From Podarcis tiliguerta (Eukaryota): a DNA stretch of 64,000 nucleotides. The stretch lies in the NCBI GenBank assembly GCA_965153285.1, contig OZ229113.1, one strand, 5' to 3'. Position numbers and translations under genes: made by a program. Below the pieces are notes generated by a model. It was not told where the DNA came from, ran no database searches, and saw only the letters and a program-made list of their open reading frames with translations. Below are positions 15,305 through 54,582 of the stretch, in pieces (the first letter of the stretch is position 1; every line of letters begins with the position of its first letter).

Positions 15305-15420
15305 CAGCGCGGCGGCAGCAGGAGGCCCCATTAGCTAAAGTGGTGCTTCAGGTTAAGAACAGTTTCAGGTTAAGAACAGACCTCCGGAACGAATTAAGTG
15401 CTTAACCCGAGGTACCACTG
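15305..15420 (+). mobile_element. Tc1/mariner (Tigger-like) MITE, right half only
   Basis: Matches the 3' half of the 38900-39141 copy and ends GAGGTACCACTG followed by TA. Confidence 0.9.
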
Positions 15421-15449
15421 TACTTAATCAGATCCTCCTAATTGAGGGT

Positions 15450-16205
15450 CCGCGTTGCGCCCCCTTCCTCTCTGTGGGGTGGGGGTGGGGGATGAGCCCG
15501 AGCCAGGTGATGGCCCCATGGTCACAGCCGATTGGCCAATCAGAGAGTGGTGGTGTGATTGTGGGGGCATTTAAAAGATGGCGGTGCATCGCTGGTGCTT
15601 TCACCTGGCTTCGCGCCGCCATACACCTGCCCACCCGCCCTCGTTTTTAGGTGTCTGCTCTGGACTTCTGTTGGTCGCCTGTTTTGGAACAGGGTCTGGG
15701 TAGGATTTTTTTCCATTTGGCAGATTGGCACTGGTCATTTGGTTTTCGCCTACCTCTTAGCAATCGTCACAACTTTGTAAGGTTTGGCGGTTAGACATTG
15801 GCTTTGTGAGGTGTGGGGGAGGGGAGGTGCGGCCATCACCTGCCCCTGCAGGTACAAGGGTATTCCGTTAAAGGAATCCGTAGGTCTGGATTTCATCCGA
15901 AGTCCACTTGGGGGGCTGGGGCCATGCCAGGACCCAGCGGGAACCCCGGGGTGAGCTTCAGTTGGTCGCCATCGACAGAGCTCCCTCTTTTGGTGGTTTA
16001 CCCTTACAGACTTCCTGCACGGCGGGCAGGTGTCAGATATAGTTTTTGCCAATGCCTAAGCCAATACCAGTCACGTTTCCTTAATCAATAAAGTTGTGGC
16101 CTAAATTTTGCCCATCAACCTTTACACTAAAATACTGTGTCAATGAGTTTGTTTGTTTTTAAAGTGTGTGTGTGTGGGGGGGTGCGCTCGGCCTTGACAC
16201 ACAAC
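15450..16205 (+). mobile_element. LTR-like non-coding element, copy 1 (possibly a DIRS/Ngaro-type tyrosine-recombinase retrotransposon repeat)
   Basis: CCAAT (15530-15541), TATA-like CATTTAAAAG (15568-15577) and AATAAAGTTGTGGCC (16087). Termini are GTTGCG...CACAAC, with no TG..CA and no TSD. Homologous to 50444-51219 and 53696-54455. Confidence 0.75.
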
Positions 16206-18337
16206 TGAGAATATCCATTAAAAAGGGAAATGTTCCAAAAGAAATTATTGTGAAAATAAGAAATATTTAGAGGATAGGATGCCAGATTTTGACTGCAAGA
16301 GCTTTCTTGACCTCTCTGCCTGAAGCACTTCTCTGCCAGCCTCCTGATATGGCTGTCTGGTATCCCAGCAGCAGCAGAAATTCTACATTCCTTTCACCTT
16401 TTTTTATGTCTGGGATCTGAGATGAAAGATCAAGAGAGAAAGGGAGCCATCCTGGGACAGTCAGGTTGGTTGAGAGAAAGCTGACCAGAAGGAGATAAGC
16501 TGCGGTGATTTTTTGATATTTTTCTTTTGGAACACCCAGAAGGTGTTCACATGCAGAGGTCATGTGGACCACACAACTTAGATACATTCCCAGTACTCAT
16601 AATTTATGCTTTGGGGTGAAAGCATCAACCCAGGCATGTATACTACAGTACAGATTGATATTCTGTGTGTCTAGCATAATTATGCCTTGATCCCCTCTCA
16701 GACTCGTAACTCAAGAATGAAAATAAAATTGCCTGCTGCAGTGATAGCTTCCAGGATTTCTATCACAATAGCTGAAATAAATCTAAGTTACAATCTGCCA
16801 TAGCCTTTACGCACCTGAGGGTCAGCGGGCAGCGAAGATACAAGAGTGTCCTGCAGTTACTGCCAAGTTTCAAAGGTGATCTCGGCCAAAGATCTGAAGA
16901 CTTCATACTGACTGAATATGTTTCTAAGTGACTTGAGACGCAGCATCTCGTTTGATGGCTTAGTGGATGTCCAATATATTTAAATTAAAATAGTGTTTCA
17001 TTACATCGGATCAGACATGGAATTACTTTGCCATTAATTATAGGTAATCTGCACTTTTACATTAACTCCATTACCAGTAATAGACTTTTAATGTGGTACT
17101 TACATTGTGCTTAAAGGGTGAGCACTGATACTACTTGGAAATATCTAAAGGAGAGAATGAGAAGGGAGATTAGAGGGGAGAGGATAAGACATGGGGTGGG
17201 GAAGGAAAAGAAAGGAAAAGAAGGGGAGGGAAGAAAGATGGGCCATTAAAAGGCTAGAGGAGGTAGTGATGAAGAAAGGAAAAGGAGCAGAAGAGAGCAA
17301 ATTAAAGGACAAAACAGGATAGGGCATTGGTGTGATCATTAACATATTGAAAGCTTATTCAGTGCTAGAAAAAATAGGTCACAACTAGGATTAGTTTCAA
17401 ATAGCTAAAGGCCATTTCAAATATTACACAAGGCGAACGGATCTGCACCAAACCATTTGTGTATTTGCAATTATGCTTGTTACCACCACACTTTATACAT
17501 TCAGGATACCTTTAAAATTGTAGCATTCTGGAAATACTGGTATCAGCAGTTATGGATTTGGGGATCTGTTTATGGGGAATAAATATAACCAGGGAACTCA
17601 GGGGGGAAGGAAGAATCACTGAATCCACAGTAGGCTTGGGAGGAGCCCATGTTGGTTCTTTCGCTACACGAGGAGGCAGGCCTCTAGAGACATCAAGGCC
17701 TGCCAGGACATTGTGGAGCAAATTGCAATCTCCATTAACAATCTGGACATCCAAAAAACAGTCTACTGTCTGAATTCTTGGAGGTGGACCAGATTAACTT
17801 TCCGCATGCTGAAAAAAGTGCCACAAAACTTGGGGCCGGTTAAACAAGCTTTGATAAGGCGAACTGTTTGATTGAAATGTTCCTTGCTTTGCGTTTATTA
17901 AGGACTGGAAATTCATTTTGGACTTTTTGCATGAAAGAGAAAATGAACTAAGAGATGGAAAAGGTGCCCCACCCATTTGTCCTCTGGCACAGAGCGCCCT
18001 TTCATTTGTTCTCTTAATGACCTATCACCCAAGTGATTACCTGAACATTGGAAGCTAGTCTGGCTTAATTAGCTCTTAACACTTGCCGGGTACAAGGATT
18101 ACATGCCTGGCACCCACAAATGCATAACAATACTATGTGTGCCAGCAATGCTTCTACATTGGTCCTATGGCTCTAAAAACATTGTGTCTAGCATCCCTAA
18201 AGAGCTGCAGTAGATGAAAATATCACTCCTTTTTCTTTCGAGTTGCACAAAGTAAGAGCTCCAGCATGAAATAGAATTAATCCATTTCAGTGTGTCTTTG
18301 TTGGCAGTACAGAACTAGGGTCTGACATGTAACCTCA

Positions 18338-38899: not shown

Positions 38900-39141
38900 C
38901 AGTGGTACCTCAGGTTACAAACGCTTCAGGTTACATAAGCTTCAGGTTACAGAATCCGCTAACCCAGAAATAGTGCTTCAGGTTAAGAACTTTGCTTCAG
39001 GGTGAGAACAGAAATCATGCTCCGGTGGTGCGGCAGCAGCAGGAGGCCCCATTAGCTAAAGTGGTGCTGCAGGTTAAGAACAGTTTCAGGTTAAGTATGG
39101 ACCTCCGGAACGAATTAAGTACTTAATCTGAGGTACCACTG
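38900..39141 (+). mobile_element. Tc1/mariner (Tigger-like) MITE, full length
   Basis: TIR CAGTGGTACCTCAG / CTGAGGTACCACTG, TA TSD, and internal CTTCAGGTTA repeats. Confidence 0.95.
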
Positions 39142-39934
39142 TATATCATTTTTCCTTTGTTTTTCAAGCTTTAATAAAAATAGTTTTTTTAAAAAATACA
39201 GCCTTCTGACAAATATCATCAAATTCCTGACCTACGGATTTCATAACATTTCATTGGGCCCTCTTGACTTTATCGTGATCTGCTACAAATGTCTCGTCTT
39301 CTTCAATAATCAAGGCAGCATGAATACAGAGGTAATGGTGATGGCAGCTGTGGCCAGTACTATCTCTGATGCTTTTTCTAGTAACATTACGTATTTCTAA
39401 TGTGTTCTACTCTTTTTTTATATGTTTGAAGTGGAAGGTGTGCTTGGTTTTCCTAATGTCAATTCATAACTTCCATCAGTTCAATCTTGGGCATCAGCTA
39501 TTTGTTCTTTATTTTCATCAGCAGAGAAAATTATTTCATTTGTTGGCATTGAAGCATTCTGCTTACTTTCCTTCAAGGCTTCTTCTCAAGGCTTCTGCTC
39601 TCGTCTTCTTGCTTTTTGACATGTCTGCTATGCTCAGGCATATATCATATAACTGTAAGTGCTTGGCACTCATTTTTAATGATTTTTATACAATGTTACC
39701 ACATTTTTACACAAAAAAATAATAAGACAAGATTAAAACATAAAAAGTCAATATTTTAATATGGTTATTTATCAAGCAAAACTAAATTATATTAATTTAA
39801 CCCAAATATCTTTTGAATTCCCAAGTCATGTTACAACTTTTTAGCACCCCTCATTTTTGAAATTTGAAATTTGAAATATTCAATAAGGAAAAGAAATGAA
39901 TCAAGATGTTTGAAAACTAATTACAAACTAGTTA

Positions 39935-45240: not shown

Positions 45241-45323
45241 TACTTCCATTCACGAATGAGAATCTGGTCTCCTGTAGGCAAAGCCAAAGTTAATGACACC
45301 ACACAAGTCACAAGTAAACTATA

Positions 45324-45565
45324 CAGTGGTACCTCAGGTTAAGAACTTAATTCGTTCTGGAGGTCCGTTCTTAACCTGTAACTGTTCTTAACCTGAAGCA
45401 CCACTTTAGCTAATGGGGCCTTCTGCTGCCGCTGCACCGCCGGGCCACGATTTCTGTTCTCATCCTGAAGCAAAGTTCTTAACCCGAGGTACTATTTCTG
45501 GGTTAGCGGAGTCTGTACCCTGAAGCGTCTGTAACCTGAAGCGTATGTAACCCGAGGTACCACTG
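45324..45565 (-). mobile_element. Tc1/mariner (Tigger-like) MITE
   Basis: Reverse complement of 38900-39141, with TA TSD. Confidence 0.95.
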
Positions 45566-46066: not shown

Positions 46067-46313
46067 CAGTGGTACCTCGGGTTACATATGCTTCAGGTTA
46101 CATACGCTTCCAGTTACAGACGCTTCAGGTTACAGACTCCGCTAACCCAGAAATAGTACCTCGGGTTAAGAACTTTGCTTCAGGATGAGAACAGAAATTG
46201 TGCGGCGGCAGCGGGAGGCCCCATTAGTTAAAGTGGTACTTCAGGTTAACAACAGTTTCAGGTTAAGAACGGACCTCCGGAATGAATTAAGTACTTAACC
46301 CGAGGTACCACAG
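46067..46313 (+). mobile_element. Tc1/mariner (Tigger-like) MITE
   Basis: TIR CAGTGGTACCTCGGGTTA, with TA TSD. Confidence 0.95.
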
Positions 46314-46442
46314 TATAGAAATTGTGTTAGTAAATAATAATAGCAATAATGTTGACGTTTTCACATTCAGCTACAGCCTTTCCTTAGGGGGGCCCTTACT
46401 CCAATCACCACCTGGTGAGATTGAGCAGAGGGTAGGGCTACC

Positions 46443-48859: not shown

Positions 48860-50443
48860 TACTAACTTAATAGAACAGCTATATTTACATATAAGGGCTG
48901 CCTCAATCTGTTCCAATCTTCTTGGTTAATTGTATTATTGCTGTTATAAATTCCTTATGCATCTAACTAATTTTTATGTGGCAGTTGGAATATTAGGTGC
49001 TTATTTATTTATTTTGTTGGCTCCACTACCCCAGTATTGATGGATGAATCTTTGCTTTAGTGCTTGCCAACCTCAACTTCTCCAGGTCAGGCTAACAGCT
49101 GCGGTCTATAAGTTGGATTTTAACATGTATAACCCTGTTGCTAGTCAGTCAAACAGATTTGGAAAGTCCCTTGCCTTACTGACCTGTCCGTTTAATTAAC
49201 TTGAATAGCTCCCATTAATCAGTGGGTTTCACCCCAAGCAGCTGAAGACACAAAGGGAAGCCAACGGTGCGTTCATTATATTCATCACAGAAAAAAGTAT
49301 TGGCAACAGTGTCATTAATAAGAATTTGAATTGCAGGCATTATTACTGAATGCATAATTATTATGCATTATTATCTGAGCTGATTATTATCCACTTTCTG
49401 GTACTTTGGTAAAGGACTCAAATTGAGGTTTTGGAAATGGTCATGAATTTATATACCTCCACTCCCTCCCCTGCCATTGTTTTACCTAAAGGCCGCTGGG
49501 TTAAACACACTGGTAAAGGAAAGGGAGGGAGTGTAGCCTGGCAAGAAATGCCAAACACAAGGTTAAAGCATAAATTATACCCAAGACTGGTTTAAATTAA
49601 CCTGCCCTCTTATCTCAGCTGTTTGCAGCAGAGCATATGCAGGATATAATTTCACTGCAGCAAATGTCATCTATAGAAGGGAAATCGGACCCTCCTCTTC
49701 TAAACAAGGTCAGTAGTTAAGGAAAAGGCGGCTGCTCTCATTAGAAAGTGGTGGACCCAAGGGCTTGACTAAATTGCCTCAAAAGTGCAAAGGTTAATAA
49801 CATTCCTCCTTTCCTCAGCTGAAGAATTTACAAAGGGAAGAGGGCTGGTTTCAAAACAGATCAGCACCCTGGTTGTTAGATTTATTTTCCTGGAAAAAAA
49901 CTACAGTCTTTTCTTTGCAGATAACTAACAGGCAACCCTCAACATCTATTACGTGAATGTGAAACTTCTGGTGGTGGGTAGACGCGAGGTCATGTTGTGT
50001 AGGGCACCCAGGCCAGCCTGGGCCCATCGGCAGGTGCATATTGAAACTTAGGCAGAAGGCAAGGCAACCAAAAGCAGGTGTAGCCAGAGCCAGTGACAGG
50101 CCAAGTCCATTAATTCTAGTTTTGCCACCATCATCCTCCCGTGTGGGTTCTACAAAGGCAACATGGAGCCCCTAGACTGGTTGTAAGCAGGAAGGCAGAC
50201 AGGTGGAGGGCTGGCTGAGGGCCAGACTGATGTCGGTGGGACAGCAACCCGGTTGCTCTAGGGGGGCCAACCTCCAGGGGAGGTTAACAAAATTCTAGAT
50301 GGCGTAACTTCAGGCGATGGTTGTCAGAGAGTGGTTACAGTTGAAGGCTCAACCAAGCAAAGCAGATATGCACACCAATGGAACTGATCACAAATAGCAC
50401 ACCGGACAGAAAAGCTTAGCATAGTGCTCTCTGCGCTGTGTTA

Positions 50444-51219
50444 GTTGCGTGTCGAGGTCCCCAAGCCACCCCTCAAATAATTCACAACTCACACATAATT
50501 TTTGTTTAAGGTTTTCGGCATAATTTTGGCCACAACTTTATTAAAATACATAAATATGAGTGGTTGCTTAGGCATTGGTTAAGACTATCTGTCCTCCCAC
50601 CTGGGGACAGAACTGACGTCCGGATTCCAGTGAAAGCCAGTAAGGGAAAACAATATTGGGGAGAAATGGAGCTGAGCCACAGGCCCTCACCTCTCCCCGC
50701 GGCTTGCCGGTCCTAGCCCCATTCCAGGGATCCAGATGAAAGCATGGCAAACCCCTGGATTCCTTTAACAGAATTCCCTTTCAGCAGCAGCATTGGAAGG
50801 GCAGGCCCAGCCAATCCTTACCCCTCCTCCAATCAATTTGATAACCAATGCCTAACCTCAAACCTTACAAGTTGTGACGATTTGCTACGTAGTAGGCAAA
50901 AACTAAATGGCCCAGCCAATAAGCCAGATGGACAAAATTCCTACCAGGCCCCTGCCCCAAAAGCAAACAACCCCATGACAGGCATAGCAAGGTCAACGCA
51001 ATAGCCCTAGATTAGGGAGGGTGGGTGGGTGATCCGGGGCATGCAGCGAAAGAGAAAGCTCCAAGCTTTGTGCACAGAATATAAAACCTTTGATCCCTCC
51101 CACCAAATTGGAAACATAGAAATTACCCCAGCAACCCAATCATCCAATAGTTGCCACTGCCCAACCCTGCCTGGCAACAGAGAGGTGGCCTGTCAGACCC
51201 CAACTCAACACGTGCTCTC
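50444..51219 (-). mobile_element. LTR-like non-coding element, copy 2 (possibly DIRS/Ngaro-type)
   Basis: The minus strand runs GAGAGCACGTGTTGAG ... AATAAAGTTGTGGCC ... GACACGCAAC and has the same conserved blocks as copy 1. Confidence 0.78.
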
Positions 51220-51568
51220 TATGAGGGAGAACACGCTCCGTCGACTTCCCTGTGATCTTTGGATGAATGGCAGTATCTAATAAATCTAATATCTAATAAC
51301 TAACATCTAATAAATAGTAATAGTTAGCTTTTCTACCGGCTGGTACTTTTTTATGAGCGTAAACACTAAAAACACTAGTCCATGTACAATCTGAAGTGGC
51401 TCCATCCAGAATTTTATCAGCTCAGCACAGAATTTTATCAGAGAGCCAGCTTACCTGGTTTCCCAGTGCTGGCATTGATGCACAGGGAGTGGGCACTGTG
51501 CGGGCAAGGGGCAGAGCCAATCCTCCCCTCCTGCAGCTGCACCTACTGATCTCCTCCTCATGGTGACT

Positions 51569-51849: not shown

Positions 51850-53695
51850 TGACCCAACACTGAAAAGCTGCCCCATCCCACTGTATCTTGCTGCCTCAGT
51901 GTATTGCCATATTTTGTGCAACACATAAAACAACCTTACCCCCCCTTTCTCAGTCACACCATCCCCCCCCCTGAATGTTAGGCATCCGCATCCCAACATA
52001 GAATGTGCCACAGCTTCTGAGCACAAGAGACTGACAGCAGGAGGAGAGAGCAGGGAAGTTTGTGACACTAAGATTCACTATTGCTGGTGCACAGATCGTG
52101 CTAACCTGTGGTCCAAAACAGTTTGTTTGTTTTTGTTTGTTTGTTTGTTTACTAATTCAATTCACGTCTTGCCTTTCCTAAGAGGCCCAGGGCAGCAACC
52201 AGATAGCAAGGCAGCAACCACATTTAATCCAGAAGTCATATGACCATTCTGTTTATTAATTTATTAATATTGATTAAAGTTGTGTAAAATTTCCATATGG
52301 GTAAGAACACCTGTTTTAAAGCATGAAGCATATTTTGGTTCTAGGTTAGCAAGCATTATAGCAAGCATTATTTTAGAAGAGGCATTCTCTCTATGTGTTG
52401 CTTTCATATTAGTACATGTGTTAGAAATGATAGCTTGGTAGATATAAATATTACAATGACAATGGAAATTTGAAACTCACATAGCAGACAGTAATGAGAG
52501 AATCAAACAGCACTTCATATAAGTTTGTTCTGGGTCCTGGTAGGATATATGTTGCATGTGTGTGTGTTTAAATCTAGCAGCCCTAGTAGATAGTGTATTA
52601 AATTTGGACTTGGAAAACGGGTTTTTCTCCCACTCGGCCTTAAAGCTAATTAGGTTGGCATTGGCATCACTATTGTTCAGCTTAAACTTATTCAGGTGCC
52701 TGCATAGCCTCCAACACACCAAAGATGAAAATCAAATGTGCGTCTTTTGTATTAAAAAAATGGGCATCTTTCAGAGCGACATTCTTGTGGGAGCCAAAAC
52801 AGGACATTTCAGGATCCAATCAGAATCTGGGAAGGCAACTGTCATTCTAGGATGTCCTGACAGTTGAGGAGTATGTGCCTGTAGTCGGGATAGAATTTCA
52901 CAACCCCTTTGTTGGAGGAAGGGCATGATATAAAAGGGATAAATAAATATGATATGTGTCTGGATTCTTTTTTCCTTCCTTCGCAACTAGTGTTTATATA
53001 CCAATATTTTTCATGAACAATTCAGATATTTTCATAAGTCCCCCACCCCGGTAATTTGACCATTTTTCAGTCATTGATTTGTCAAAATAACTGTTAACAG
53101 GCATGAGAGGATCAGTCTATTTCTGTCACTTCCATGTAGGGCTGTGCAGCCGTCACAAGATTTGTCTTGTGTCTGTAACATTAGGAAGCGCTTTCTGGTG
53201 GTAAGAGCTGTTTGAAAGCGTTAGGGGAAAGTACAATTGGGAAAGAAGCAGACCCCCCAATCGTCTGCTGATGCTCCAGTCTCACAGTCAAATCTCAGAG
53301 GAGAAGGCTGACCCACATGTTTACTTCAAAAACCCTCCCTCAAATCCCTGATATTGGAGTGCACTGGGAAAAATAATTTGCTCCTGTTTAAAGCTACAGT
53401 TGTCCATTGGGGTGGGAAAGCCTAAATTTCCCCACCCCTTTCTCTCTCAAGCTCAGTGCATTTTCTTATTCATCCTGGGGCTGCTTCCCAGAAAGGAAAT
53501 TGTAGGGGGAAATGGTCATGAATTTAAAATAATGGAAAACTGAGGCAACAGGAGGTCAGGCACTCCCTTATCTACCTTGACATGCCTTCTTATGTGCGTG
53601 ATTGGACTCAGGTACATGAAAAACTGCCCTGATTCATCTCATTACATCCCCACATTCTTTTATGTTTACCCATAAATTGTGTCCTCCAAATCATG

Positions 53696-54455
53696 GAGAG
53701 CCACGTGTTGCGGTGAGGTCACCAAACTGCCTTTTTATTGCTGGGGTGGGTCCGCTTGGTTGACCTCCGCACCTCATTGGTTGCCCCTTTGTTGCTGGGG
53801 CAAATTTCTGTCGGTTGGGGTTTGATTGGCAACTAAGGGGCCATTTAAGGAGCTGCACGAGGCGAAGTACTTTCTCTTTCGCATCGTGCAGCGGATCTCC
53901 CTCCCTCCCTATAATTTAAGGTTGTATTTTTGACCTTGCTATGCCGGTCTAGGAGTCGTCTGTTTTTGGAGCAGGGGCCCGGTAGGAATTTTGCCACTTG
54001 GCTGATTGGCTGGTGCCCCTTGGTTTCTGCCTACCGTGTAGCAAAATGTCACAACTTTGTAAGGTTGGCAGTTAGGCATTTGGAGGGGACGTGGTTGGCT
54101 GTGCCTGCCCTTCCATTGCTGCTGCTAGGGAATTCTGTTAAAGGAATCCAGGGGCTTGATTTGCTTTGTCCGATCCCCTCAGGGATAGGGCCATGCCAGA
54201 GTTCCTGGGAGCATCTGGGGTGAACTAAGAGGCAGAAATCCACCTCTGTGCTCCCCCAGTATGTTTTCCCTTACTGACCTCTGGAGGTTCCAGCTGTCAG
54301 TCCTGTTCCTGCTGGTGAAGGTTCAGGTAGTCCGAACCAATGCCTAAGCAACCATTCACCTGCTGTAATCAATAAAGTTGTGGCCAAATTAATGCCAAAA
54401 ATCTTAAACAAATATTTTGTGTCCTGTGTGATTTATTTTGGAGGGGGTTTGGGGG
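53696..54455 (+). mobile_element. LTR-like non-coding element, copy 3 (3' terminus eroded)
   Basis: GAGAGCCACGTGTTGCG start, GATTGG boxes, CCATTTAAGG, and AATAAAGTTGTGGCC at 54371. Confidence 0.78.
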
Positions 54456-54582
54456 TAAATGCATTCTGCCCCGTTTTCTACCATTTTGTTTAATCCACAT
54501 TAAAATACATATTTTTAAAAAATCTATTTTCTCCGTGCATGCATGCATGTGTGTAGAAATGTATACAGTATATAAAAAATTT

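What the first reader, a model, noticed from the sequence alone, without database searches (positions are those of the whole stretch)
15678..15760. ENE-like (poly(A)-clamping triple helix) RNA module in a lizard LTR-like element
Seen: copy 1 folds as a lower stem GGUAGG(15699-15704)/CCUACC(15749-15754), a bilateral U-rich internal loop (A-U7 opposite U4-CG), and an upper stem CCA/UGG extended by UGGC/GUCA. It lies ~330 nt upstream of AATAAA (16087). The same architecture occurs in copy 2 (50891-50945, minus: GGUAGG AAUUUUGU CCA..UAG UUUUUG CCUACU) and copy 3 (53980-54036: CGGUAGG AAUUUUG CCA..UGG UUUCUG CCUACCG). An upstream hairpin covaries across the copies (CUGUU/AACAG, UUGCU/GGCAG, CUGUU/AGCAG). 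Established: the KSHV PAN ENE, the MALAT1/NEAT1 3' ends and plant/fungal TE ENEs use a U-rich internal loop between two stems to form U-A-U triples with an A-rich tract, which blocks decay. Inference: this vertebrate retroelement may stabilise its RNA with an ENE, which I do not know to be described for squamate TEs. I also recall, without verification, a similar GGAAGG-AAUUUU..UUUUUCG-CCUUCC motif in some amphibian and turtle CR1 3' UTRs. If confirmed, that would imply a structured module shared across TE classes. Caveat: the U tracts in copies 2 and 3 are interrupted.
Basis: partly seen in the sequence, partly recalled or inferred. Interest (0 to 1): 0.85.

Follow-up and report, generated by a model that had tools for sequence, protein, structure and literature searches.

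The report
ENE-shaped hairpin in lizard LTR-like repeat
A non-coding, LTR-like lizard repeat carries a conserved RNA hairpin shaped roughly like the "clamps" that grip poly(A) tails and protect some viral and transposon RNAs, but the resemblance is minimal and the function is untested.

Summary
Three diverged copies (58-70% identical) of a ~750-bp ORF-less, LTR-like unit carry the described hairpin at 15698-15755 (+), 50946-50890 (-) and 53980-54036 (+). RNAalifold recovers it unaided. Its consensus energy beats all 500 column shuffles (z -4.8). Stems are more conserved (22/28 invariant columns) than the element (321/660).

The ENE reading is only partly supported.
- The shape is cheap: a descriptor fitted to copy 1 hits 4 times in the window against about 2 in shuffles.
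- Covariation rests on one pair of 14.
- The U tracts are short or interrupted (7/4, 4+1/5, 4/3+1) and less conserved than the stems.
- The ENE-like fold is the minimum-energy fold only in copy 1.
- The invariant loop apex is an inverted CCAAT box, so a DNA-level promoter reading competes.

In its favour:
- G·U pairs favour the strand that carries AATAAA.
- G-C pairs flank the loop.
- A conserved long-range helix could bring the poly(A) signal close to the hairpin.

I put a true poly(A) clamp at about 0.25.

The scan has flagged this hairpin before on other DNA of this genome (several notes, one follow-up).

The parts
15430..16210 (+). Copy 1 of the ORF-less LTR-like unit. Ends are uncertain by about 20 nt. 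The 5' third is poorly alignable to copies 2 and 3.
   Evidence: the shared core by BLAST is 15674-16140
15531..15577 (+). Promoter-like stretch: back-to-back ATTGG/CCAAT (15531-15540) and TATA-like TTTAAAAG (15570-15577). TATA-like strings sit in the same alignment columns in copies 2 and 3.
   Evidence: sequence reading only, no TSS data
15678..15693 (+). Upstream 5-6 bp hairpin (CCUGUU/AACAGG)
   Evidence: 100% of cells paired, changes on one side only
15698..15755 (+). ENE-shaped hairpin, copy 1. Lower stem 15698-15704 pairs with 15749-15755. 5' loop 15705-15712 (A+U7). Upper stem 15713-15715 pairs with 15740-15742. Apical stem 15718-15721 pairs with 15734-15737. 3' loop 15743-15748 (UUUUCG).
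15724..15728 (+). Invariant ATTGG (inverted CCAAT box) in the apical loop. Copy 3 reads CTGATTGGCT, a full NF-Y-type Y-box.
15760..15794 (+). Most invariant block of the element, directly 3' of the hairpin. RNAalifold puts a small hairpin here.
15791..15802 (+). Long-range block A (UUAGACAUUGGC), complementary to block B
16048..16059 (+). Long-range block B (GCCAAUGCCUAA), 27 nt upstream of AATAAA
   Evidence: duplex with block A and its flanks is -24.3 kcal/mol
16087..16092 (+). AATAAA, followed by an invariant GTTGTGGCC and a GT-rich stretch (16135-16176)
50420..51240 (-). Copy 2 of the unit. AATAAA at 50542-50537, block A from 50855, block B at 50578-50568.
50890..50946 (-). ENE-shaped hairpin, copy 2. 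Loops are AAUUUUGU and UUUUUG. The upper stem CCA/UAG has a C-A mismatch.
53680..54460 (+). Copy 3 of the unit, head to head with copy 2. AATAAA at 54371-54376, block A from 54072, block B at 54337-54347. The 3' end is probably truncated.
53980..54036 (+). ENE-shaped hairpin, copy 3. Loops are AAUUUUG and UUUCUG. The outer pair is C-G.

Best explanation
The hairpin is a real, selectively maintained stem-loop in a non-coding, LTR-like retroelement family (promoter-like 5' part, own AATAAA and GT-rich 3' part, no ORF).

I read it as a cis-acting RNA element on the strand that carries the poly(A) signal. It is one part of a larger fold: a small hairpin on each side, plus a 12-20 bp long-range helix that can draw the poly(A) signal to within about 36 nt of the hairpin base.

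The two U tracts of the internal loop sandwich a few adenosines of the poly(A) tail as U-A-U triples. Neighbouring G-C pairs take A-minor contacts. Deadenylation of the element's RNA is slowed as a result.

Shown here: the hairpin, its conservation, its strand bias and the long-range complementarity.

Inferred, not shown: that it is transcribed, that the U loops stay open, and any contact with poly(A). The match is a minimal, sub-canonical version of an ENE (3-4 possible triples).
For: - Same layout in three copies that are only 58-70% identical overall but 74-82% identical in the hairpin.
- RNAalifold recovers the fold unaided. SCI is 1.01, z -4.8, 0/500 column shuffles as good.
- Stems have 22/28 invariant columns against 321/660 element-wide.
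- The outermost lower-stem pair is G-U, U-A and C-G in the three copies.
- Seven G-U cells, against one C-A, make the sense strand the better folder: -18.2 against -13.2 kcal/mol.
- UUUU on the 5' side and UUU on the 3' side are invariant. A C-G pair abuts both U tracts on the upper side in copy 1, and two G-C pairs close the lower stem.
- Block A/B complementarity is present in all three copies, -24 to -27 kcal/mol as a duplex.
[quoted passage not shown] The Evade ENE lies upstream of the whole 3' LTR, so several hundred nt to the tail is not disqualifying (PMC12501189).
- ENE-type elements were predicted in stickleback retroviruses (PMC7583470).
Against: - The shape alone occurs about 2-6 times per window in shuffled sequence.
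- U tracts are 7/4, 4+1/5 and 4/3+1, with G or C interruptions in copies 2 and 3. None offers five aligned U/U levels as in PAN.
- The U loops (9/14 invariant) are less conserved than the stems.
- There are 1-2 nt purine spacers between the lower-stem G-C pairs and the U tracts.
- The upper stem is only 3 bp and is broken in copy 2.
- The fold is the MFE only in copy 1. In a full-length context the lower-stem probability is 0.66, 0.07 and 0.00, and the long-range helix is probable only in copy 2.
- Covariation is not significant with three sequences (87/500).
- No Rfam family matches even at E<=10.
- There are no data on transcription, strand or RNA ends.
Confidence: 0.28

Rival explanations
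1. DNA-level reading. The conserved core is a transcription-factor site, an inverted CCAAT or Y-box of the NF-Y type at the hairpin apex. It is one of several in an LTR-type promoter/enhancer. The flanking inverted repeat and T runs are incidental or serve DNA recognition. The RNA fold has no role.
For: - ATTGGC is invariant in the apical loop while its neighbours vary. Copy 3 reads CTGATTGGCT.
- CCAAT/ATTGG pentamers number 6, 10 and 4 in the three copies against about 1.8 expected each. Three of them are positionally conserved.
- The apex looks like a tandem TTGGCTG/ATTGGCTG duplication.
- The antisense strand gives an equally good z-score, as any palindrome would.
Against: - The stems, not the apex, are the best-conserved part: 22/28 against 6/12 invariant columns.
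- Changes in the stems are wobble-compatible on one strand only, which a protein site on duplex DNA does not predict.
- This CCAAT lies about 150 nt downstream of the positionally conserved TATA-like box.
Confidence: 0.25
2. An RNA element with a different job in a retroelement transcript. Candidates are an R/U3 stem-loop that modulates polyadenylation or expression (as R-region stem-loops and the HTLV-type fold that juxtaposes signal and cleavage site do), an export or packaging/dimerisation signal, or a protein-binding U-rich loop. There would be no triple helix with poly(A).
For: - The same evidence supports a conserved sense-strand structure.
- The hairpin is one of about seven conserved blocks and is not the most conserved one.
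- The invariant apical AUUGG is complementary to the CCAAU of block B, so a loop-helix or kissing contact is possible.
- The short, interrupted U tracts fit a generic internal loop better than a clamp.
Against: No specific known element of these kinds matches: Rfam finds nothing. The bilateral U-rich loop closed by G-C pairs is not explained by this reading.
Confidence: 0.25
3. No present function. The inverted repeat was inherited from the master copy of the family. It looks conserved because the three copies share ancestry and mutations are few, and its ENE likeness is coincidence.
For: - Only three sequences are available, and copies 2 and 3 are close relatives.
- The shuffle control for covariation is not significant.
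- The shape is common by chance.
- Two pairs are broken in copies 2 and 3.
Against: The copies are 30-42% diverged overall, yet the stems keep 79% invariant columns and 96.5% of cells paired, with a three-way change at the outer pair. An earlier follow-up on another copy reports that the shape is the family's majority sequence (s1-821233; not tested here).
Confidence: 0.2

Closest known systems
KSHV PAN RNA ENE and related viral single-domain ENEs
   Same: Stem-loop with a bilateral U-rich internal loop closed by G-C pairs, on the sense strand upstream of a poly(A) signal. Copy 1 reads ..GG-A-U7-CC...GG-U4-CG-CC.., close in layout.
   Different: PAN forms five U-A-U triples plus three A-minor triples (PMC7583470). 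Here at most 3-4 aligned U/U levels are possible, with G/C interruptions in two copies. The upper stem is only 3 bp. The hairpin lies about 355-370 nt from the expected cleavage site unless the long-range helix forms. No binding or stabilisation data exist.
Transposable-element ENEs: plant and fungal double-domain ENEs, the Arabidopsis Evade/Copia93 ENE, and predicted ENEs of stickleback retroviruses
   Same: Retroelement context. Evade's ENE also sits hundreds of nt from the tail, upstream of the 3' LTR (PMC12501189). The proposed role is protection from deadenylation.
   Different: Most TE ENEs have two domains with four U tracts. This one has a single domain with short tracts, lies inside the LTR-like unit rather than in a spacer before it, and sits in an ORF-less repeat of unresolved class in an amniote.
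MALAT1/NEAT1 and the MALAT1-like loci (tancRNAs) of Anolis
   Same: Triple-helix RNA stability elements do exist in lizards (PMC12941219 citing Zhang 2017). Their U tracts are also interrupted by G/C.
   Different: Those pair with a genomically encoded A-rich tract and are followed by a tRNA-like mascRNA cut by RNase P. Here there is no matching A-rich tract, no tRNA-like structure and no Rfam mascRNA hit. A canonical AATAAA is used instead.
CCAAT/Y-box (NF-Y) modules of retroviral LTR promoters
   Same: Multiple CCAAT/ATTGG motifs in both orientations in an LTR-like unit. One is invariant at the hairpin apex.
   Different: This does not explain the strand-specific wobble pattern or the stem conservation. 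No occupancy data exist.

Membership tests
ENE (poly(A)-clamping triple-helix element) | Stem-loop with an internal loop between a lower and an upper stem, conserved among relatives | tested here: met
   96.5% of cells paired, SCI 1.01, z -4.8. The upper stem is broken in copy 2.
ENE (poly(A)-clamping triple-helix element) | Both strands of the internal loop are U-rich, with tracts comparable to characterised ENEs (PAN: five U-A-U triples) | tested here: inconclusive
   Tracts are 7/4, 4+1/5 and 4/3+1. The invariant core is UUUU / UUU. This is within the 3-6 triples seen in natural RNA triplexes generally, but below PAN.
ENE (poly(A)-clamping triple-helix element) | G-C pairs adjacent to the U-rich loop for A-minor contacts | tested here: inconclusive
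   On the upper side a C-G pair abuts both tracts in copy 1. In copies 2 and 3 it is separated on the 5' strand, by GU and by G respectively. On the lower side two G-C pairs are present but separated from the tracts by 1-2 nt (A/AA and CG/G).
ENE (poly(A)-clamping triple-helix element) | Lies in the 3' part of a polyadenylated transcript, in sense | not testable with these tools
   It is on the same strand as AATAAA, 332-348 nt upstream.
ENE (poly(A)-clamping triple-helix element) | Binds oligo(A), or stabilises an intronless reporter in a U-tract-dependent way | not testable with these tools
   This is an experiment. About 10 of more than 200 predicted elements have passed it (PMC7583470).
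ENE (poly(A)-clamping triple-helix element) | Covariation supporting both stems | tested here: inconclusive
   One pair of 14 changes on both sides and two change on one side. The shuffle control is 87/500, from three sequences only.
MALAT1-like triple helix module | Downstream genomically encoded A-rich tract plus a tRNA-like structure | tested here: not met
   No tRNA-like structure, no Rfam mascRNA/menRNA hit, and no complementary A-rich tract next to the hairpin.
Retroviral-type LTR | Promoter-like 5' part and a poly(A) signal with a GT-rich downstream element in one unit of a few hundred bp | tested here: met
   (sequence reading only).
Retroviral-type LTR | TG..CA termini with short inverted repeats and a 4-6 bp target-site duplication | tested here: inconclusive
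   The ends cannot be fixed from three copies. There are hints of TGTGTYC / GRCACACA-type termini, but no consistent duplication. The 9-nt repeat bracketing copy 2 recurs at the 5' end of copy 3.
Retroviral-type LTR | Paired copies flanking gag/pol sequence | tested here: not met
   No Pfam hit in any ORF of 120 aa or more tested, nor in ORFs between copies 2 and 3, which are inverted and not direct. All three look solitary.

The most novel reading that the evidence does not exclude
A high-copy, non-coding LTR-like retroelement family of lacertid lizards protects its own RNA with a minimal single-domain ENE. A conserved long-range helix brings that ENE next to the poly(A) site. This would be the first ENE-type poly(A) clamp in an amniote transposable element, working with only 3-4 U-A-U triples.
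Probability: 0.2. Interest if true: 0.7.

Novelty: new member of a known kind. Interest (0 to 1): 0.4.

Why it matters
ENE-type clamps are known from herpesvirus and other viral RNAs, from MALAT1/NEAT1, and from plant and fungal transposons. In Arabidopsis Evade, the clamp has been shown to raise RNA stability and mobility.

A working clamp in an abundant squamate retroelement would extend this counter-defence against deadenylation to amniote transposons. It would also define how small such a clamp can be. And it would give a handle on why this ORF-less family became so abundant.

If instead the hairpin is a promoter module or a different RNA signal, the case is ordinary. It would then be a useful warning that the ENE shape alone is expected by chance a few times per 64 kb.

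Tried and rejected
- **Sequencing runs.** So there is no read evidence, no family-wide copies, and read laying was not used.
- **Rfam.** Nothing at gathering thresholds on the whole window. At E<=10 on copy 1 there were only four chance-level hits to unrelated families.
- **Covariance model of the hairpin.** With filters off over the window it found only the three known copies. The next hit scores 14 bits at E 0.35. This gives no sign of the module in other repeat families here.
- **Coding partners.** No Pfam hit at E<=0.01 in ten ORFs of 120 aa or more. Only two far-sub-threshold hits appeared in ten ORFs between copies 2 and 3.
- **tRNA-like structures.** None.
- **Hammerhead/Penelope-like reading.** The head-to-head pair suggested it, but no hammerhead core and no Rfam hit were found.
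- **DIRS-type inverted terminal repeats.** The two copies point outward, only 2.5 kb of ORF-less DNA lies between them, and no partners exist in the window. Not supported.
- **Target-site duplications and TG..CA ends.** No consistent solution.
- **Primary ENE papers.** Tycowski 2012 and 2016, Mitton-Fry 2010, Torabi 2021 and Zhang 2017 are not held in the library. Definitions were taken from PMC7583470, PMC12501189 and PMC13541005.
- **CR1 3' UTR motif.**
- **Earlier scan notes by sequence.** The look-up was blank.

Full report
**What is there**

The window holds three copies of a roughly 750-bp repeat.
- Copy 1 lies at about 15430-16210 (+).
- Copy 2 lies at about 51240-50420 (-).
- Copy 3 lies at about 53680-54460 (+).

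Copies 2 and 3 are 72% identical by BLAST over about 600 bp. Copy 1 matches them at 73-81% only over parts of the core 15674-16140, and its 5' third barely aligns. In the MAFFT alignment, pairwise identity is 58-70%.

Each copy has the same layout:
- CCAAT/ATTGG motifs and a TATA-like string in the same alignment columns (copy 1: 15531-15540 and 15570-15577);
- a long conserved block that contains the hairpin;
- further conserved blocks;
- AATAAA followed by an invariant GTTGTGGCC and a GT-rich stretch.

There is no ORF with a Pfam hit in or near the copies. There is no tRNA-like gene and no Rfam family at gathering score. The unit therefore reads as an ORF-less, LTR-like, self-contained Pol II-type unit.

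Its class is unresolved. I could not fix TG..CA ends or a target-site duplication from three copies. Copies 2 and 3 lie head to head, 2.5 kb apart, with nothing coding between them.

**The observation**

The hairpin is a real conserved feature.
- RNAalifold on the three copies recovers the lower stem, the bilateral internal loop, the 3-bp upper stem and the apical stem without guidance.
- The consensus energy is -18.2 kcal/mol with a structure conservation index of 1.01. It is lower than in all 500 column shuffles that keep the conservation pattern (z -4.8).
- On the named structure 96.5% of cells are standard pairs, against 37-54% when the 3' partners are slid by 1-3 columns.
- Stem columns are invariant in 22 of 28 cases, against 321 of 660 ungapped columns element-wide.

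Covariation is thin.
- One pair of 14, the outermost pair of the lower stem, changes on both sides (G-U, U-A, C-G).
- Two pairs change on one side.
- Two pairs are broken, in copy 2 and copy 3 respectively.
- The shuffle control is not significant at 87/500.
- The upstream hairpin said to covary shows only one-sided wobble-compatible changes.

**Strand**

Any hairpin is also a hairpin on the other strand, and the antisense alignment has an equally good z-score of -5.4. But seven cells are G-U or U-G, which would be A-C mismatches on the other strand, against a single C-A cell. The sense consensus is also 5 kcal/mol more stable. This modestly favours an RNA structure on the strand that carries AATAAA. 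It argues against a pure duplex-DNA palindrome.

**How special is the ENE-like shape?**

Not very. I wrote a descriptor that just admits copy 1:
- lower stem of at least 5 bp ending in two G-C pairs;
- 5' loop of 5-9 nt with a run of four U;
- upper stem of at least 3 bp;
- 3' loop of 5-8 nt with a run of four U.

It finds 4 sites on the two strands of the window, three of them unrelated to this repeat. Twenty dinucleotide-preserving shuffles give 1.9 +/- 1.6. Relaxed to admit copy 3 as well, it finds 10 sites against 6.0 +/- 1.9. Copy 2 fails even the relaxed version because of its C-A mismatch. The argument therefore rests on conservation, not on the shape.

**ENE-specific features**

[quoted passage not shown] PAN forms five U-A-U triples and three A-minor triples (PMC7583470). 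In Evade, the U tracts and the immediately adjacent G-C pairs were both needed (PMC12501189).

Here the tracts are:
- copy 1: A+U7 opposite UUUUCG;
- copy 2: AAUUUUGU opposite UUUUUG;
- copy 3: AAUUUUG opposite UUUCUG.

Counting levels from the upper stem, both strands offer U at four levels in copy 1. Copy 2 offers four with a G interruption. Copy 3 offers three with G and C interruptions. The invariant core is UUUU and UUU.

On the upper side a C-G pair abuts both tracts in copy 1. On the lower side the two G-C pairs are separated from the tracts by A or AA on one strand and by G or CG on the other. The loops are less conserved (9/14 invariant) than the stems (22/28). That is the opposite of what one expects if the U tracts are the functional core, although the numbers are small.

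**Thermodynamics**

The ENE-like fold is the MFE only in copy 1. With the fold enforced, copies 2 and 3 are about 12 and 7 kcal/mol above their MFE. In those MFE folds the G-rich segment upstream pairs with the 3' U tract or with the apical region.

In a putative full-length RNA, from the TATA-like box to the poly(A) site, the lower-stem pair probability is 0.66, 0.07 and 0.00. Nearest-neighbour models penalise large U-rich loops and ignore tertiary contacts. So this counts against the reading but does not settle it.

**Distance to the tail, and the long-range helix**

The hairpin ends 332-348 nt before AATAAA. That alone is not disqualifying. The Evade ENE lies in a spacer upstream of the entire 3' LTR.

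All three copies also carry two complementary blocks. Block A (UUAGRCAUUGG-like) starts 35-36 nt after the hairpin. Block B (CCAAUGCCUAA) ends 23-27 nt before AATAAA. Together with their flanks they give duplexes of -24 to -27 kcal/mol. If this helix formed, about 90 nt of chain would separate the hairpin from the tail.

In global folding, however, the helix is probable only in copy 2. Its core never varies, so it carries no covariation evidence.

**The DNA-level rival**

The apical loop keeps ATTGGC invariant while the positions around it vary. In copy 3 it reads CTGATTGGCT, a textbook inverted CCAAT or Y-box (the NF-Y consensus is from general knowledge).

CCAAT/ATTGG pentamers occur 6, 10 and 4 times in the three copies, against about 1.8 expected each from the window's density. 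Three of them are positionally conserved: the apex, block A and block B. Part of the conservation may therefore be promoter or enhancer grammar.

It is also unclear which TATA-like string is used. The conserved GTTAAAGG near 15866 is an alternative to the one at 15570. If the downstream one is used, the hairpin lies in U3 rather than R. In an LTR element, either position puts it in the 3' part of the full-length RNA.

**What could not be done**

I therefore have no evidence on transcription, strand, RNA ends or family-wide variation.

The covariance model built from the three hairpins finds nothing else in the window. The idea of a module shared across TE classes has no support here. The recalled CR1 motif could not be tested.

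**Relation to earlier notes of the scan**

This hairpin, or ones very like it, has been flagged repeatedly on other pieces of the same genome. One follow-up (s1-821233) reports a repeat in thousands of copies in a lacertid genome. It says the shape is the family's majority sequence and the function is untested. I could not check the copy number or the majority claim. My results on three further copies agree with its cautious verdict.

**Verdict**

| Reading | Probability |
|---|---|
| Working poly(A) clamp | about 0.28 |
| DNA-level CCAAT module | about 0.25 |
| Another RNA role | about 0.25 |
| No function | about 0.2 |

If the clamp reading is true, this would be a new member of a known kind. 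TE ENEs are known in plants, fungi, slime mould and stickleback retroviruses, and MALAT1-like triple helices exist in Anolis. It would be notable for being amniote, single-domain and minimal. Interest is moderate at 0.4, because the decisive evidence is missing and the shape by itself is cheap.

Noticed in passing
window 50420-51240 (-) and 53680-54460 (+): Copies 2 and 3 lie head to head, with their promoter-like ends facing each other across 2.5 kb of ORF-less DNA. The arrangement is unexplained. It does not fit DIRS-type inward-pointing terminal repeats.
   Followed up: partly
window 51220-51212 and 50431-50423: A 9-nt direct repeat AGAGAGCAC brackets copy 2. A near-copy of the motif also sits at the 5' end of copy 3, so it is probably element sequence rather than a target-site duplication.
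   Followed up: partly
window 53677-53685 and about 54417-54425: The string TTGTGTCCT at the 5' edge of copy 3 recurs in its GT-rich block after the poly(A) signal. This hints at terminal redundancy of the unit.
   Followed up: no
window 15765-15794 (and the equivalent in copies 2 and 3): The most invariant block of the element (up to 90% invariant columns) lies just 3' of the hairpin. RNAalifold places a small hairpin there, and its role is unknown.
   Followed up: partly
window 15855-15884: A second highly conserved block lies around GTTAAAGG, flanked by an imperfect inverted repeat. It could be an RNA hairpin or an alternative TATA-like box, which would put the ENE-shaped hairpin in U3.
   Followed up: no
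window 15791-15802 with 16048-16059; 50855-50842 with 50568-50581; 54072-54083 with 54337-54347: A conserved long-range complementarity lies between a block 35 nt after the hairpin and a block 25 nt before AATAAA. It gives -24 to -27 kcal/mol as a duplex in all three copies but is globally probable only in copy 2.
   Followed up: yes
the three copies as a whole: CCAAT/ATTGG pentamers are enriched: 20 found against about 5.5 expected. ATTGG lies mostly in the 5' half and CCAAT in the 3' half.
   Followed up: partly
window 15309-15422, 39030-39143, 46202-46315, inverted 45322-45435: A 114-nt repeat, 93-94% identical between copies, ends a few bases before the approximate 5' edge of copy 1. It and the many Sauria-type SINE copies (families D1-D5) make up much of the window.
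   Followed up: no
   Followed up: no
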